A stretch of 63,145 nt of DNA, the filler included, from Octopus bimaculoides (Eukaryota): assembly GCF_001194135.2 (NCBI RefSeq). It is 4 parts of 4 records of this genome, joined end to end, with 100 filler letters (N's around TTAATTAATTAA, not from the genome) between each part and the next. Parts side by side here need not be neighbours in the genome. Positions count along the whole stretch, not along the records: positions 30,864 to 53,773 come from NC_068988.1; 3 more parts are not named here. One strand, given 5' to 3'. The stretch's first letter is position 1. Each line of letters begins with the position of its first letter. Below are positions 32,565 to 51,999 of this stretch, piece by piece. Position numbers and translations under genes: made by a program. The notes beneath the pieces are model-generated. The model did not search any database. It had not been told where the DNA came from and worked only from the letters and a program-made list of their open reading frames with translations.

Positions 32565-32716
32565 GTGAAACTAAGTTTGAGAAAAAATGATATCGACGTT
32601 CGATCATTACTTTTCGACGGAAGAGGGACAACTTTCAGATCGTGGTTCAGAAGTGGTAACCTTATTGAAACACCGTGGTTTGGAAATGTATCATCAGAAT
32701 ACAAGTTCTTTCCAAA
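32565..32716 (+). CDS. PAN-family paralogue A, exon equivalent to coding exon 3 (152 nt, phase 0/2): VKLSLRKNDIDVRSLLFDGRGTTFRSWFRSGNLIETPWFGNVSSEYKFFP(N)
   Basis: ttttcag acceptor and GT donor at the same positions as paralogue B. Same length, 31/51 aa identical to B. Confidence 0.85.
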
Positions 32717-33899
32717 GTATAAATTACTCTCTTGTTCTTTATTAGCACCAACAATTTTTTCTATGTTAGTAATTAAGATTTCTCACACAGGCAAGCAGGC
32801 ACACATTTCGGAAAAAGACTACAATTAACTACATCGATCTCAGAAATTAGTTAGTGTTCCGTTATGGATCCTCTAAGAATAAAAGACAAGCACGATCGTG
32901 ACGAGATTCGCACTCAAAATTTTGAAGAACAAAAGTAACAACTTCGCTAATTTTTGTAACCTCAACGATTATACTTTATATCATTTTAATTGATGATGAT
33001 GATGATGATCTTTGAATTATTAGTCATAAGTTATCACAAGTACATAAGTGGTAATTCCTTCTATCAACTTCTCCATAATGAACTCACTAATTCGGACAAC
33101 TAATTGCTGTCTTTGTGCAGCGCTTAGAATGAAACATTCGCCTTCCAATAACTGAGTTTTCACTAGGTCTCAAATTTATGGTTTGTGTAGGCAACCAACT
33201 TGAATCTTGAGCATCTACCTTATCCTTAACAGCTGACTTAATAAATATTTTATCCAGATACGATTTTGACGGCCCACTGTGGTTGCTTCCGCTCCACTCA
33301 GGCACATCAGGGAAATATAGTTATATATAGAGAGTTCAGTACGTGTCCTGGAAAGCTTTTAGACCTCTGAAAAAGAATCTGGTCATATTGTCGCATAGAT
33401 GACAACATATCTGTAATCACGACCTCTGATGCTGCTCAAATCCAGGGCCATAGGCTTACTGACTGGATCCAGAATAATGGCCCGTACCTTGAGATTTAAA
33501 TCTCAACAGACCACGAGCTGAAAATGTCTCATAATCGTCGATGATAATTAGTCCTAGTCTCGCAGATAGCTAATCACATCTATGTCGAGCGACCTAAGAT
33601 TATTCAGCAAGTAATCTTGACAAGAAATTAACTTGGCAAAAAATGGAACAAAATTGAAAAACAGATAATGATAACAAGGATAATAATCCTTTCTGCTATA
33701 GGCACAAGGCCTGGATTTTGGGGAGGGGACTAGTCGATTACATCGACCTCAGGACTCAACTGGTACTTAATTTATCGACCCTGAAAGGATGCATCGCAAA
33801 GTCGATCATGAAGGAATTTGAATTCAGAACGTAGCGAAGGACGAAATACCACTAAGCATATCGTCCTGAATGCTAACGATTATTCAGACCTGCACCCAT

Positions 33900-34165
33900 T
33901 CTGAGATGGATACAAACGGAATTTGGATACAAACGATCCTACCACGATCCTGGGATGACGATGGCAATGCATTATATCCTCTACCCTAAGGCGACCGTAT
34001 ACAGGTTGTACATGTAGAGCAAGATTGGCCGTGGCTCGATAAATGTACAGGAGTGCAACAACAGAGAAAGAAGAAACTTGATAGAGTACTTGGCAAACAG
34101 TAAACAAAGGCCAGCTACAGTATGCTGTAAATGCACAAGTACTTGCCAACCATGAAATAGATGAA
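33900..34165 (+). mobile_element. Possible highly decayed piggyBac-like transposase C-terminus in an intron (also at about 46500-46745)
   Basis: INVQECNNRERRNLIEYLA...TVCCKC loosely resembles the piggyBac C-terminal region. Frameshifted, weak. Confidence 0.3.
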
Positions 34166-34557
34166 AGGGGGAATGATATAATAATGTATTCTCTACAACA
34201 ATTTAGAACACAGAGAATTCATCGTCATATAATAATAAAATCTTATTAAGATAGCACTCTATCACAATTGGTCAATGTAGTCTTAGTTGAATTGTGTTGT
34301 AAGAAGAAATATGAGGTGATTGTTGAGGCTGAAATAGCTTTTGATTATAGATCTATTTGATGAGAAATGAACTGAAGCTAAATACGAGCAAGATCTGATT
34401 TCCTTAAATTACAATTATTAAACGAGGACCACACATTCACTAATTTCAGTGATAAAAAGATTAACTCAGTGATTTCATTAAGCAGAATTGATTGTATTAA
34501 ATAAAATCATAAAATATTCTCTTATTGAATTCATCTGTTGTAATATATCACTTTCAG

Positions 34558-34664
34558 TCAAGACACGTTTCACATCCGGCCAGATGAATATGTATGGTTT
34601 GCGATGAAGTCATTTAAGAAAAATGCTACAAGTTACAGTATCAAGTACAGAGAAAATGTTCACA
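34558..34664 (+). CDS. PAN-family paralogue A, exon 4 (107 nt, phase 2/1): QDTFHIRPDEYVWFAMKSFKKNATSYSIKYRENVH
   Basis: ctttcag and GTAAGT splice sites. Open in the phase required by the previous exon, same length as the B exon. Confidence 0.85.
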
Positions 34665-36492
34665 GTAAGTAATATATGTCTTTTTTATGTACTGTGAAGT
34701 CAGAGTTTGTTTATTTTTATTTACACTTATATTTTTTGTTTGAAAATCTACCTTTTCTAGAGCGTTTCTTTAACATTTACTAGCATAGCCAACTGCACGA
34801 ATGATTATTGCTATAAACGAGAATTTATACTCAGGATAGAGGAGCAACTGGCTCCTCAGTTGTTGTGCACTGATATTCTTATTCTTCTTGATTTTGGAAG
34901 ATATTCACATCTTTTTGGAAAATACTCAGAGACTTTAATTTCTAAAGAACGGATATTATCGTTAGACAAGGTAAATGTTGGTATCTGAGCAGGTGATGTA
35001 AGTGCATTGTGGGATATTTTCTTATTTCTGATTGCCATATTTTCAGATATATGTATTATTATCCCTATTACTGCTATTATTACTATTATGTCTGCTGAGT
35101 GTAACTTCAAAGCTTGTCACGGTTTTGATTGGGTACGTGTGTTTGAAGTATTCTGGTGGCTGTGGAACGAACGGATGTTTTCGTTTGCACCTCCTGTTTA
35201 AGTGTGTGTTCTGTTCATGAACTGAATGTGTGTATGTGAAAAGTAATAGCCGGAGAGTTAATCTACAATCGCCTGTTTTAAAACTTCTTGAACTTGGTGA
35301 CCTACTGTCAGCTGCATGAAAGCTATAAATTCTTTCATCGAGGTCTTTCTTTACCTTCACTTTCGTCCTTTTTTCTTCCTTTTTCTTCTCACTATGATAC
35401 TGACTTCTGTCTATCCTGTTCTTCTTGCAGATGGGATTCCACTGTTTTCATTTCTTCAATTTTTCGGTTTCTAATTCATTATGAATATTATTAAAGACGT
35501 TTCACAGTAACAAACATTGTGATGTTGTAGACTGAAGCTATTGTGTTTACCGGGGGTTTGTACTGTCTGTCAAGTCGCGACAAGGGCATCAGCCACAGAG
35601 CACTTTACGCAGTATGCGTGCTGTTCCACTACACTAAGATTCTACGATATTTCAAATGTGTCCGGATGTTTCGCTGCGTTCTGAGTTCAAATTCTGCCGA
35701 GTTCGACTCTACTTTTCAATCTTTCGCGATCCATAAAACAAGTACCTGCTGAACACTGAGGTCGATGTAATCGACTCGTCCCGTCCCCCAAAATTACTGC
35801 AAAAATTGTGGCAAAATTTTAAACCATCATTGTTGCTGTTATTGTTATTATTATTTCATTACTATTATTATTAGTAATGTCTTAGTCCATGATGCTTTGC
35901 CAACACTAATATATTCAAAGCCATAAATATATCGTTGAGATTTACGGAAAAACAAAAGACATAGAGAGGTGCATAAACAACAAGCAGCCCCTATTCACTA
36001 TTAGCGTTCTAAACCACACCCTGACACGTTGTTAAATTCTTCCTCATCTTCTCCCCAAAAGTCTTCTTGCTCTCCTTATCCCTGAGACACATTCTTCATG
36101 ATTTTCCTTTAAAATGCATCATATTTGTGAAGTCACCTTAAAAGCCAGGTACCTAAAATGCAACTCGCAATATTAAATAAATAAATGAATAAAAATCCTG
36201 TAGTTTGCGTACAGCCATAAAGTATATTTTGCTCGCTCATTGACAGACATCGAAGGCGAAACTAATAAAGCTAACACTGTATTCTCTGATAATTAGATAT
36301 GTTCGATTAATTGCAATTGAATATTAAAAATGTTCTATTAAGTCTTTTTTTATTCTTATTTATTTCTACACTTCAAACATTTATTTTCGGCATCAAATAT
36401 GTTATTTGTTCATCTAAATGACAATGCCAAAAGTATATATGAACACAGTCTCTATTTCAATTGATTTGAAAATAATTTTTATTTTATTTCAG

Positions 36493-50255: not shown

Positions 50256-50429
50256 TATCCTTATCGCTGTACTTACTGTTGCTGATGCTGTTGCTGCTGC
50301 TGCTACTGCTGTTGCTGTTAGTTTTATTATTTCATTAGTATTAGTATTATTTTATTCCATGGTGCTTTCTCAACATTAATATATTCAAGGCCATGTGTAG
50401 ATATATATATGTATGTATGATTGACCGTT

Positions 50430-50632
50430 GACTGAACACTATTCAATTTTTTTTCTCCGTGTTTTTCTCCTTGTCTCCGTATTCTTTCTGTTGAAGAGCG
50501 TAGCTTGAAACGTCAAAGACTTTCCGTATTCCCGAGCGTCATACTAATATATACTTTTGTTATTTACACCACCTGTCCTCGTCTGTTGTTATTTTTTGTA
50601 TATTCTCCCATATATATATATATATATATATN
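50430..50632 (+). mobile_element. Penelope-type terminal repeat with a minimal hammerhead-like motif, followed by (TA)n
   Basis: Shares the sequence at 2960-3030 next to the GIY-YIG remnant. TCTTT-CTGTTGA-A-GAGC gta GCTT-GAAA-CGTC-AAAGA. Confidence 0.65.
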
Positions 50633-51410
50633 NNNNNNNNNNNNNNNNNNNNNNNNNNNNNNNNNNNNNNNNNNNNNNNNNNNNNNNNNNNNNNNNNNNN
50701 NNNNNNNNNNNNNNNNNNNNNNNNNNNNNNNNNNNNNNNNNNNNNNNNNNNNNNNNNNNNNNNNNNNNNNNNNNNNNNNNNNNNNNNNNNNNNNNNNNNN
50801 NNNNNNNNNNNNNNNNNNNNNNNNNNNNNNNNNNNNNNNNNNNNNNNNNNNNNNNNNNNNNNNNNNNNNNNNNNNNNNNNNNNNNNNNNNNNNNNNNNNN
50901 NNNNNNNNNNNNNNNNNNNNNNNNNNNNNNNNNNNNNNNNNNNNNNNNNNNNNNNNNNNNNNNNNNNNNNNNNNNNNNNNNNNNNNNNNNNNNNNNNNNN
51001 NNNNNNNNNNNNNNNNNNNNNNNNNNNNNNNNNNNNNNNNNNNNNNNNNNNNNNNNNNNNNNNNNNNNNNNNNNNNNNNNNNNNNNNNNNNNNNNNNNNN
51101 NNNNNNNNNNNNNNNNNNNNNNNNNNNNNNNNNNNNNNNNNNNNNNNNNNNNNNNNNNNNNNNNNNNNNNNNNNNNNNNNNNNNNNNNNNNNNNNNNNNN
51201 NNNNNNNNNNNNNNNNNNNNNNNNNNNNNNNNNNNNNNNNNNNNNNNNNNNNNNNNNNNNNNNNNNNNNNNNNNNNNNNNNNNNNNNNNNNNNNNNNNNN
51301 NNNNNNNNNNNNNNNNNNNNNNNNNNNNNNNNNNNNNNNNNNNNNNNNNNNNNNNNNNNNNNNNNNNNNNNNNNNNNNNNNNNNNNNNNNNNNNNNNNNN
51401 NNNNNNNNNN

Positions 51411-51443
<33 letters not shown>

Positions 51444-51928
51444 TAGCGTTCTAAAATTACACCTTCACATATTGTTGAATTCTTCCTCATCCTCTCTGCA
51501 AAGTTCTTCTTGATGTCTTTATCCCTGAGGCACAATCTTCATGATTTTCCTTTAAAATGTATTATAATTGTGAAGTCACCTTAAAAGCAACAATGTATCT
51601 ATAAAATACCCGTAATATTAAATGAATAAATACCCTGTAATTTGCGTACAGCCCATAAAATATATTTTGCTCGTTGATCGACAGACATCGAAAGCGAATC
51701 TAATAAAGGTAACACTGTATTCTCTGATTATTATATATGTTCCATTAATTGCATTTGCATATTAAAATTGTTTCATTTAGTCGTTTTTGATTCTTATTTA
51801 ATTATACGTTTCAAACATTTACTTTCGGCATCGAATATGTATTTTTCATCTAAATGAAATTGCCAAAAGTACACATAAACACAATCTGTATTTCATTTGA
51901 TTTAAAACAAATCTTCATTTTATTTCAG

Positions 51929-51999
51929 TGATGCAGGGAAAAGTTGGACTGGAAACTGTGGATGTCTCCATCTTATTACAGCAGAATTCAAATAATTAG
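51929..51999 (+). CDS. PAN-family paralogue B, terminal exon: (L)MQGKVGLETVDVSILLQQNSNN*
   Basis: tttatttcag acceptor, phase 1. The five exons total 744 nt = 247 aa plus stop. Confidence 0.82.

What the first reader, a model, noticed from the sequence alone, without database searches (positions are those of the whole stretch)
32565..51999. Paralogue exons are more divergent than their introns: accelerated evolution in a tandem gene family
Seen (hand-counted): A vs B nucleotide identity is about 72% for exon 3 (109/152), 57% for exon 4 (61/107) and 68% for exon 5 (42/62). Neighbouring introns are about 75-93% identical. Both copies keep exon length, frame and splice sites, so this is not pseudogene decay. 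Known: this inversion occurs in snake-venom PLA2 and conotoxin genes and in immune and gamete recognition genes under diversifying selection. Inference: this is a rapidly diversifying secreted recognition or effector family, possibly undescribed, and the best candidate for a new system in the window.
Basis: partly seen in the sequence, partly recalled or inferred. Interest (0 to 1): 0.88.

Follow-up and report, generated by a model that had tools for sequence, protein, structure and literature searches.

The report
Fast-evolving secreted octopus gene pair
Two neighbouring, unannotated Octopus bimaculoides genes for secreted apple-domain proteins differ more in their last three exons than in their introns, mainly because selection keeps changing part of the protein, as happens in venom and recognition genes.

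Summary
A versus B identity is 109/152 (exon 3), 61/107 (exon 4) and 42/62 (exon 5). Aligned non-exon DNA is 87% identical (Fisher p = 1e-19). The piece is Octopus bimaculoides chromosome CM046608.1, 30,957,504-30,980,413. B is a complete five-exon gene: signal peptide, PAN/apple domain, then an all-beta domain with no Pfam or PDB match. A is cut off upstream of exon 3. Neither is annotated. They belong to a cluster of at least 8 genes, all named only "uncharacterized".

The gap at 50632-51410 lies inside B's intron 4 and breaks no reading frame.

My own codon models, run on 6-8 family members, give a family-wide omega of about 0.92. About 17-20% of codons have omega near 4.9 (M2a vs M1a LRT 54-72; M8 vs M7 61; simulated null maximum 12.7). 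These codons are concentrated in exons 3-5. The A branch has omega 3.2.

The O. vulgaris orthologue of B shows the same inversion, so intron homogenisation cannot be the whole cause. One conversion tract just upstream of exon 4 (A-B 97%) does exaggerate the exon 4 contrast.

Function and expression are untested. This is a new member of a known kind.

The parts
31047..37554 (+). Copy A of the tandem duplication. It holds coding exons 3-5 of gene A. Exons 1-2 should lie just upstream of the piece edge at 30864.
   Evidence: The collinear blastn chain to 43687-53698 is 71-91% identical per HSP. In B, exon 2 lies about 300 nt upstream of the point where A-B homology starts, which in A would fall before 30864.
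32565..32716 (+). Gene A exon 3 (152 nt, starts in phase 0). It encodes VKLSLRKNDIDVRSLLFDGRGTTFRSWFRSGNLIETPWFGNVSSEYKFFP.
   Evidence: ttttcag|G acceptor and |gtataa donor. It is the only frame open in both copies. tblastn matches octopus paralogues at 55-65%.
34558..34664 (+). Gene A exon 4 (107 nt). It is the most divergent exon, 57% identical to B.
   Evidence: ctttcag| acceptor and |gtaagt donor. Its frame offset of 1 matches exon 3's two leftover bases. 8 of 35 codons have P(omega>1) above 0.9.
36493..36554 (+). Gene A exon 5, coding part (62 nt including the TGA stop).
   Evidence: tttcag| acceptor. The frame continues from exon 4 and ends ...LDGMDISISLEQN*.
42027..42330 (+). Gene B coding exon 1 (304 nt): signal-peptide-like N-terminus (MIFSRLQVFTIILLVIF) plus a Cys-rich PAN/apple domain. 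The exon begins at an acceptor near 41999, and an upstream in-frame ATG lies at 42009.
   Evidence: Pfam PAN_1/PAN_4 hits are below threshold. The same 304-nt exon occurs in O. vulgaris and in O. bimaculoides paralogues. The PAN fold was confirmed on the model of paralogue P0001.
43292..43383 (+). Gene B exon 2 (92 nt). It encodes SGWQKIFVFNKTAIKKSPIYKHWNILPIEK and bridges phase 1 to phase 0.
   Evidence: This was the only candidate with a good acceptor and donor and the right phase. With it, the 241-aa model covers 98% of LOC106876622. Exon 2 is 92 nt in all seven full-length family genes reconstructed.
44651..44802 (+). Gene B exon 3 (152 nt).
47146..47252 (+). Gene B exon 4 (107 nt).
51929..51999 (+). 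Gene B exon 5, coding part (71 nt including the TAG stop).
34197..34557 (+). Gene-conversion tract in intron 3 of A, with its partner in B at about 46782-47145. It ends at or near the exon 4 acceptor.
   Evidence: A-B identity is 97%, 90% and 97% in successive 100-nt windows, against 82-87% for B-V and 79-84% for A-V over the first three windows (34197-34496); the last 61 nt show no clear signal. The last 200 nt are 94.9% (A-B) against 82.2% (B-V).
50632..51410 (.). Assembly gap (779 N) inside intron 4 of gene B, within a B-specific repeat and microsatellite insertion (50395-51440).
   Evidence: The flanks are (TA)n and (TG)n, and collinearity with A and the O. vulgaris orthologue is kept on both sides.
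47308..50309 (.). Mostly B-specific inserted DNA in intron 4. Only 47717-47916 is homologous to A 34714-34912. This makes B's intron 4 4676 nt long, against 1828 nt in A and 882 nt in O. vulgaris.
   Evidence: The ORFs in it have no Pfam match. Parts recur elsewhere in octopus loci.
52220..52951 (.). Second assembly gap (732 N), 220 nt downstream of B's stop codon, in a (TA)n run.
   Evidence: The same 732-N gap is present in public locus L006.
43687..53698 (+). Copy B of the tandem duplication (the part homologous to A).

Best explanation
A and B are neighbouring paralogues of an octopus gene family. Each gene has 5 coding exons and encodes a small secreted protein of about 240 aa. The protein has a signal peptide, a PAN/apple domain (exon 1), and an all-beta C-terminal domain of about 140 aa (exons 2-5) that has no Pfam model and no detectable solved relative.

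Shown: after tandem duplication, a conserved scaffold is kept under purifying selection. It comprises the Cys framework of the apple domain, W/F/G core residues, and the motifs FDGRGT..SWF and PWFGN. About one codon in five is driven to change repeatedly by positive selection. These codons lie mostly in exons 3-5 and map largely to predicted loops. The result is that exons 3-5 diverge faster than the nearly neutral introns. Occasional gene conversion between neighbours homogenises stretches of intron, seen directly upstream of exon 4. That conversion has not erased the exon differences, and it sharpens the contrast.

Inferred: the proteins are extracellular binding or recognition molecules whose partner keeps changing, such as a microbe, a gamete or mate, or prey. 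The apple domain would serve as the more constant adhesive or carbohydrate-binding module.
For: Gene model and family. The 241-aa B model matches LOC106876622 and LOC106876621 over 98% of its length. The exon pattern 304-319 / 92 / 152 / 104-110 / 50-71 nt holds in the seven full-length genes, and A's exons 3-5 fit it.

Location. The window matches O. bimaculoides CM046608.1 at 100% identity. The family cluster spans 30.70-31.01 Mb.

Fold. The AF2 model of P0001 has pLDDT 80. Its N-terminal domain matches plasminogen PAN, TgMIC4 apple and the SML-2 lectin at Foldseek probability 1.0 and rmsd 2.2-2.6 A. The C-terminal domain has no significant PDB match and no Pfam hit.

Inversion. Exons are 66% identical against 87% for non-exon DNA, p = 1e-19. 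Differences are spread evenly over codon positions: 35, 39 and 34 of 106.

Selection. M0 omega is 0.92-0.94. M2a vs M1a LRT is 53.8 (6 taxa) and 72.4 (8 taxa). M8 vs M7 LRT is 61.4. The result is robust to topology and to using exons 1-3 only (p = 9e-5). The bootstrap null maximum is 12.7. Mean posterior omega per exon is 1.2, 0.9, 1.5, 2.5 and 2.3.

dN against introns. A-B dN is 0.46±0.07 against an intron K of about 0.15-0.19. For the cross-species pair B-V, exons 3-5 give dN 0.244±0.042 against an intron K of about 0.12, while exons 1-2 give dS 0.145.

Cross-species check. A-V intron identity is about the same as A-B outside the one tract. Within-genome homogenisation therefore cannot explain the conserved introns.
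Against: Family-wide and pairwise omega values are about 1, not above 1.

dS in exons 3-5 (A-B 0.41, B-V 0.26) is itself about twice the intron divergence. Part of the excess may therefore be mutational, methodological (multi-nucleotide changes), or due to older exon ancestry.

In exons, A is as close to the LOC128248537 type (dN 0.37) as it is to B (0.46). The exon tree cannot place A firmly.

Recombination among paralogues is demonstrably present, and it is known to inflate site-model LRTs.

The codon models are my own implementation on only 6-8 sequences. The alignment of exons 4-5 is uncertain.

There are no expression data. A's exons 1-2 and promoter are outside the piece. The signal peptide was judged by eye. 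The binding function is inference only.
Confidence: 0.72

Rival explanations
1. Intron homogenisation. A is an old paralogue whose exons are truly ancient. Its introns were overwritten by B-like sequence through gene conversion. Under this view the inversion reflects young introns rather than fast exons.
For: A conversion tract is visible: A 34197-34496 is 97% identical to B, against 82-87% for B-V. dS(A,B) of 0.41 exceeds the intron K of 0.15-0.19. At exon level A is no closer to B/V than to the LOC128248537 type (dS 0.43-0.49, dN 0.37). The exon topologies that place A with B/V or elsewhere differ by less than 1 lnL with 6 taxa.
Against: Outside that tract, A-V (O. vulgaris) introns are as similar as A-B introns. 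Any homogenisation would therefore have to predate the species split. The orthologous pair B-V cannot exchange sequence, yet it shows exons 3-5 at 74-82% against introns at 80-94%, and dN of 0.244 against an intron K of about 0.12. Site models detect omega of about 5 regardless.
Confidence: 0.15
2. Relaxed constraint. A, or the whole family, is drifting neutrally or is a young pseudogene, and omega of about 1 simply means no selection.
For: M0 omega is 0.92-0.94 and pairwise omega is 0.8-1.5. A and B are not annotated. A's first exons are not visible. In both A and B the near-invariant Tyr of the C-terminal D-x-Y motif is replaced by Ser.
Against: Neutral sequence cannot diverge faster than the adjacent introns (66% against 87%). 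About 30-35% of codons sit in a class with omega of about 0.2. The open frame survives with simulated probability 0.015. All splice sites are canonical. M1a (nearly neutral) is rejected. The A-branch omega of 3.2 differs from 1 at p = 0.023.
Confidence: 0.06
3. Exon-focused mutation. Exons 3-5 receive extra mutational input, for example error-prone repair, multi-nucleotide mutations, or patchy conversion from divergent cluster members. This raises dN and dS together.
For: For B-V, dS in exons 3-5 is 0.26±0.07, against 0.145±0.05 in exons 1-2 and an intron K of about 0.12. For A-B, dS is 0.41 against an intron K of 0.15-0.19. Differences are equal across codon positions. At least 8 potential donor genes lie within 300 kb.
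Against: The standard errors on dS are large because there are only about 75 synonymous sites. No known paralogue is close to A's exon 4. Conserved scaffold codons inside the same exons argue against indiscriminate mutation. This process would add to selection rather than replace it.
Confidence: 0.07

Closest known systems
Snake-venom group II phospholipase A2 genes (Trimeresurus/Protobothrops; Nakashima et al. 1993, as summarised in PMC7285919)
   Same: Both are tandem paralogues with introns and UTRs more conserved than the mature-protein exons. In both, substitutions are about equal at the three codon positions, KA is about equal to or above KS, and the signal-peptide region is spared (compared).
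   Different: The protein fold and the animal phylum are unrelated. There is no evidence here of venom-gland expression or toxicity. Here the spared part includes a whole apple domain.
Conotoxin gene superfamilies (Conus; PMC3862624)
   Same: Both are molluscan secreted families with conserved introns and signal regions and hypervariable mature-peptide exons. Exon-focused mutation has been proposed for both (one search lists the paper; the comparison rests on my own knowledge).
   Different: Conotoxins are peptides of 10-40 aa with Cys frameworks. These are two-domain proteins of about 240 aa, and the variable part is a beta domain without a Cys framework.
Octopus bimaculoides LOC106876622, LOC106876621, LOC106876625 and LOC128248537 ('uncharacterized protein' / 'Apple domain-containing protein')
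   Same: They have the same five-exon structure, the same two-domain architecture and the same chromosome cluster.
   Different: They share only 34-59% amino-acid identity with A and B. A and B themselves have no protein record.
Apicomplexan microneme PAN/apple adhesins and lectins (TgMIC4, EtMIC5, Sarcocystis SML-2) and the plasminogen/HGF N domain
   Same: The N-terminal domain adopts the PAN/apple fold (Foldseek probability 0.99-1.0; profile hit to 1hky at E = 0.0013). In those proteins the fold binds carbohydrate or protein ligands.
   Different: Sequence identity is only 11-22%. Ligand binding was not tested here. Those proteins lack the C-terminal beta domain.
Wider metazoan proteins carrying the same C-terminal domain (Gigantopelta LOC121382312, Elysia RRG08_018459, Acanthaster LOC110983420 with D8C, amphioxus LOC144909227 with EGF/FN3/ZP)
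   Same: They share the core motif VKL.L.KN..V..L.FDG.G.T..SWF....L..SPW and the C-terminal D.M.IY. Gastropod members also have an N-terminal PAN domain.
   Different: Those domains are about 35-60 aa longer and carry a Cys pair that the octopus subfamily lacks. All of them are uncharacterised.

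Membership tests
PAN/apple domain superfamily (N-terminal domain, exon 1) | Sequence match to the Pfam PAN models at or above the curated cut-off | tested here: inconclusive
   B exon 1 scores 13 bits on PAN_1 (cut-off 21.4) and 12.9 bits on PAN_4 (cut-off 27). Octopus paralogues score 16-22 bits. The distant family member P0016 passes PAN_1 at 29.5 bits.
PAN/apple domain superfamily (N-terminal domain, exon 1) | Apple fold: a helix packed on a beta sheet, tied together by conserved disulfides | tested here: met
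   The AF2 model of paralogue P0001 has pLDDT 90-94 over the domain. It matches 4dur_B, 2ll3 and 2yil at Foldseek probability 1.0 and rmsd 2.2-2.6 A over 70-78 columns. B exon 1 is 59% identical to P0001, and the Cys positions are conserved.
Octopus PAN + beta-domain family (LOC106876621/22/25 type) | Five coding exons of about 304, 92, 152, 104-110 and 50-71 nt with phases 1, 0, 2 and 1 | tested here: met
   B has 304/92/152/107/71. A has ?/?/152/107/62. The pattern is the same in six further genes.
Octopus PAN + beta-domain family (LOC106876621/22/25 type) | Core motifs W-Q-K-I/V-F, VKLxLRKN, FDGRGTxxxSWF, PWFGN and C-terminal D-x-x-I-L-L | tested here: met
   Alignments. The profile search on exon 3 alone retrieves the family at E down to 3e-21.
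'Accelerated evolution' gene families (venom PLA2 / conotoxin pattern) | Mature-protein exons more divergent than the flanking introns | tested here: met
   66% against 87%, p = 1e-19. The same holds for A-V and for the cross-species pair B-V.
'Accelerated evolution' gene families (venom PLA2 / conotoxin pattern) | KA/KS at or above 1, with positively selected sites | tested here: met
   Pairwise omega is 0.9-1.5. The selected class has omega 4.9 on 17-20% of codons, with LRT 54-72. The models are my own code, not PAML.
'Accelerated evolution' gene families (venom PLA2 / conotoxin pattern) | Expression in a venom, immune or reproductive tissue, and a demonstrated effector or recognition activity | not testable with these tools
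   No transcriptome or proteome data were reachable. No paper cites the loci or accession numbers.
Fibrinogen-related domain (considered for the C-terminal domain because of the G-W-Q-K-I-F start) | FReD fold or a Pfam Fibrinogen_C match | tested here: not met
   There is no Pfam hit. Foldseek matches to Angptl3 and ficolin FReD have probability 0.15-0.38 and rmsd about 10 A. None appears with the C-terminal-only model.

The most novel reading that the evidence does not exclude
The cluster would be an undescribed hypervariable recognition repertoire of octopuses, serving immunity, mate or gamete recognition, or chemotactile function. It would be built on a novel beta domain. In its variable exons even synonymous sites change about twice as fast as the neighbouring introns. 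That would point to an exon-targeted source of variation, either focused mutation or patchy conversion among at least 8 cluster members, working together with selection.
Probability: 0.2. Interest if true: 0.8.

Novelty: new member of a known kind. Interest (0 to 1): 0.6.

Why it matters
Exons that outrun their introns are one of the clearest genomic marks of an arms race. The classic cases are venom toxins, immune receptors and gamete-recognition proteins. Here the mark sits on an unnamed cephalopod family whose variable domain has no Pfam model and no structural relative, and two of its members are missing from the annotation. Three things follow. It gives cephalopod biologists a concrete candidate for a fast-evolving extracellular recognition or effector system. 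It provides a compact locus, with two paralogues plus a cross-species orthologue, in which selection, gene conversion and possible exon-biased mutation can be separated. It also flags several mis-split gene models that need correcting.

Tried and rejected
- tblastx of A against B was swamped by microsatellite translations.
- The word-index search with A's exons 3+4 found nothing.
Only the exon 3 profile could be used.
It was rejected because its identity is 51/62 rather than 42/62, its phase is wrong, and it has no homologue match.
- No intermediate exon conserved between A and B was found upstream of exon 3. B's exon 2 lies outside the A-B homology.
- Attempts to identify the species through ORF look-up failed. 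P0002 and P0005 were not on record. An exact look-up of the B protein found nothing. Identity finally came from the overlap with the LOC106876621 locus.
- O. bimaculoides LOC106876622 was first taken as a possible orthologue of B. It was rejected because the introns are only about 70% identical.
- The C-terminal-only structure model was mediocre (pLDDT 62), and the fold search gave only noise.
- ORFs in B's intron 4 insertion and in the intergenic region have no Pfam match.
- Biopython's pairwise ML method timed out on the full matrix, so I replaced it with my own NG86 code.
- The first attempt to stitch LOC106876621 exons failed and was fixed.
- Literature searches for the loci, the accession numbers and apple-domain proteins in octopus returned nothing relevant.

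Full report
**What is in the piece.** The real sequence is 30864-53773. It has two N runs, 50632-51410 (779 N) and 52220-52951 (732 N). Direct-repeat and blastn analysis show a tandem duplication on the + strand. Copy A is about 31047-37554 and copy B about 43687-53698, 12.1-12.6 kb apart at the 5' side. B has been lengthened by insertions in its 3' half. GC content is 31-42% and microsatellites are abundant.

**Checking the observation.** I searched the A/B alignment for segments that are flanked by AG and GT in both copies and open in the same frame.
- Exon 3: A 32565-32716 / B 44651-44802.
- Exon 4: A 34558-34664 / B 47146-47252.
- Exon 5 (terminal coding exon): A 36493-36554 / B 51929-51999.

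The phases fit: 152 nt leaves 2 bases, 107 nt leaves 1, and exon 5 supplies 2. All acceptors follow pyrimidine tracts, and the donors are gtataa, gtatat or gtaagt. Exon 5 is not strictly the same length in the two copies. A's TGA is TCA in B, which ends 9 nt later at TAG.

Collinear non-exon columns are 2922/3359 = 87.0% identical, against 212/321 = 66.0% for the exons. Fisher p is 1.3e-19 overall, and each exon is individually significant. In 100-column windows intron identity is 76-97% and drops abruptly at each exon.

**The assembly gap.** The gap at 50632-51410 lies in intron 4 of B, between (TA)n and (TG)n runs, inside DNA that A lacks (B 50395-51440). On either side B is collinear with the uninterrupted intron 4 of A (35831-35924, then 35999-36819) and with the 882-nt intron 4 of the O. 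vulgaris orthologue. No reading frame crosses the gap, and exons 4 and 5 join in frame by splicing. What the gap hides, and its true length, remain unknown. The second gap lies 220 nt downstream of B's stop codon.

**Building the gene.** An ORF at 42027-42330 begins MIFSRLQVFTIILLVIF..., a signal-peptide-like start, and continues into a Cys-rich segment with weak PAN hits. It ends in phase 1 at a GTGAGT donor. The only well-signalled exon that restores phase 0 is 43292-43383. The resulting 241-aa protein matches O. bimaculoides LOC106876622 (53% identity) and LOC106876621 (49%) over 98% of its length, which validates the five-exon model. A contains only exons 3-5. By analogy with B, its exon 2 should lie about 100 nt beyond the piece edge.

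**Where it comes from.** The locus of LOC106876621 (L006) overlaps the window at 100% identity. Window 51420-52219 equals L006 29283-28484, and window 52952-53773 equals L006 27751-26930. The same 732-N gap is present in both. The piece is therefore Octopus bimaculoides GCA_001194135.2, CM046608.1:30,957,504-30,980,413, + strand.

LOC106876621 lies about 9.4 kb downstream of B, in convergent orientation. Other members lie at 30.70-30.73 Mb (LOC128248537), 30.75-30.79 Mb (LOC106876622 plus the start of another gene) and 30.84-30.87 Mb (LOC106876625 plus another gene). That makes a cluster of at least 8 genes over about 300 kb. The B protein is not in the protein collection, and no gene is called over B's 3' end in L006. 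A and B therefore appear to be unannotated.

**The protein.** An exhaustive profile search with exon 3 alone found 31 proteins. They are octopus paralogues, Argonauta, gastropods (Elysia, Gigantopelta), a sea star protein with D8C domains, and an amphioxus protein with EGF, FN3 and ZP domains. All are named 'uncharacterized'. The shared C-terminal domain has no Pfam model.

AlphaFold on LOC106876622 with 11 sequences gave pLDDT 80 and pTM 0.75. Its N-terminal domain matches PAN/apple structures (plasminogen, TgMIC4, Sarcocystis lectin SML-2) at Foldseek probability 1.0. The beta-rich C-terminal domain has no significant structural or sequence relative in the PDB.

**Is the inversion selection or intron homogenisation?** I reconstructed the genes of six relatives with their introns:
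- the O. vulgaris gene in L002, called V, whose deposited model CAI9727043 is partial;
- LOC106876622, LOC106876621 and LOC106876625;
- the orthologous pair O. sinensis LOC118764445 / O. bimaculoides LOC128248537.

V is the cross-species orthologue of B. B-V introns are 80-94% identical (K about 0.12), similar to the control orthologue pair (K 0.07-0.11) and to B-V dS in exons 1-2 (0.145). The introns therefore look roughly neutral rather than unusually conserved.

Three comparisons show the same dips at exons 3-5:
- A-B: 74/67, 57 and 68%.
- A-V: 73/63, 58 and 65%.
- B-V: 82/77, 79 and 74%.

Surrounding introns are mostly 76-94%. A-V introns are as similar as A-B introns, and B and V sit in different species. 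Within-genome homogenisation therefore cannot be the general cause.

It does occur locally. In A 34197-34496, A-B identity is 90-97% whereas B-V is 82-87%. This tract runs up to exon 4 and makes that exon's contrast (95% against 57%) look more extreme than divergence alone would.

**Rates.** For A-B, dN is 0.46±0.07 and dS is 0.41±0.10. For B-V exons 3-5, dN is 0.244±0.042 and dS is 0.263±0.074. For B-V exons 1-2, dN is 0.10 and dS is 0.145. dN in exons 3-5 is two to three times the intron divergence. Differences are spread evenly over codon positions (35, 39 and 34).

I wrote GY94/F3x4 codon models with full branch-length optimisation.
- M0 omega is 0.94.
- M2a beats M1a by LRT 53.8 (p = 2e-12), with class omegas of 0.20, 1 and 4.95 and proportions 0.34, 0.46 and 0.20.
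- M8 beats M7 by 61.4.
- The result holds on the alternative topology and on exons 1-3 alone (p = 9e-5).
- With 8 genes the LRT is 72.4.
- Twenty-nine data sets simulated under M1a gave LRTs with mean 0.8 and maximum 12.7, so the code is not manufacturing the signal.

Codons with posterior above 0.9 number 2/101, 0/31, 5/51, 8/35 and 5/18 in exons 1 to 5. Against the DSSP string of the model, most fall in the predicted loops between strands (my mapping). The A branch has omega 3.2, higher than background (p = 0.011) and higher than 1 (p = 0.023). Random substitution at the observed level leaves the 106-codon frame open only 1.5% of the time.

**What remains unsettled.** Family-wide omega is about 1. 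dS in exons 3-5 is about twice the intron divergence. In exons A is as close to the LOC128248537 type as to B, although its introns are clearly B-like. These facts leave room for older exon ancestry with pre-speciation intron conversion, for exon-biased mutation or patchy conversion from other cluster members, and for inflation of dS by multi-nucleotide changes. Recombination, which is demonstrably present, can inflate site-model tests. Expression, the missing 5' part of A, and function are untested.

**Comparison with what is known.** The pattern matches the classic 'accelerated evolution' of habu PLA2 genes. There too, introns and UTRs are more conserved than coding exons, rates are equal at the three codon positions, KA is at or above KS, and the signal region is spared (PMC7285919). 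It also matches conotoxin genes (PMC3862624). The phenomenon is therefore a known kind. The family, its beta domain, and these two genes are undescribed: no paper cites the loci or accession numbers.

**Verdict.** I add two amendments: a local intron conversion tract contributes to the exon 4 contrast, and the synonymous sites of exons 3-5 are also unexpectedly fast.

Noticed in passing
window 30864-53773 = O. bimaculoides CM046608.1:30,957,504-30,980,413; L006 26930-29283: The piece could be placed exactly on the public assembly. Neither A nor B has a protein record or a called gene there, although six to seven cluster neighbours are annotated.
   Followed up: yes
L002 (O. vulgaris OX597821.1) 9776-22093; L005 8793-14184; L003 6043-19032: Several public models of this family are split or truncated. 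O. vulgaris CAI9727043 (125 aa) uses an upstream acceptor for exon 2 and stops after exon 3. O. bimaculoides A0A0L8G9X6 (the PAN exon) and LOC128248537 are two halves of one five-exon gene. O. sinensis LOC118764445 lacks its PAN exon. Complete 5-exon ORFs can be reconstructed for all three.
   Followed up: yes
window 33690-33881 and 46303-46494 (intron 3 of A and B); L002 13890-17403, several copies; L003 7392-7916: An interspersed repeat of about 150-190 bp sits in intron 3 of both copies. It recurs at least 5 times, in both orientations, in the O. vulgaris locus, and as a tandem triplet in the O. sinensis locus. It is probably a SINE- or MITE-like element. It inflates local 'intron similarity' only slightly.
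   Followed up: partly
exons 3-5 of A, B and V (window 32565-36554, 44651-51999): Synonymous divergence in exons 3-5 (B-V 0.26, A-B 0.41) is about twice that of exons 1-2 (0.145) and of the introns (0.12-0.19). This has not been explained. It could come from multi-nucleotide changes, exon-biased mutation or mosaic ancestry.
   Followed up: partly
window 33258-33319 and 45385-45446: A 62-nt segment in intron 3 is flanked by AG and GT in both copies. It is open in two frames and 82% identical (51/62). It would shift the frame if spliced in, and it has no protein homologue. It is probably chance or part of a repeat.
   Followed up: partly
L002 1-9700 against window 30864-37600: The O. vulgaris locus has no A-like copy within 10 kb upstream of the B orthologue, and none within 8 kb downstream. 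The A orthologue is either further away or lost there.
   Followed up: partly
window 35057-35428 (intron 4 of A); L003 17568-17918, L005 13066-13228: Part of A's intron 4 is shared with the LOC128248537-type genes (75-82% identity) but is absent from B and from the O. vulgaris orthologue. This suggests a deletion in the B/V lineage, or mosaic ancestry of A.
   Followed up: no
P0007 (Acanthaster), P0008 (amphioxus), P0013-P0019 (molluscs): The C-terminal domain is an unnamed metazoan module with no Pfam model. It occurs with PAN in molluscs, with D8C in a sea star, and in four repeats with EGF, FN3 and ZP in amphioxus. The octopus cluster carries a shortened form without the Cys pair.
   Followed up: partly
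window 30864-31030, - strand: An ORF fragment at the piece edge (...GRLVVLDVDGSDGCAFRLISV) looks like a retrotransposon endonuclease remnant, next to (GATA)n and (CA)n runs. I did not check this.
   Followed up: no
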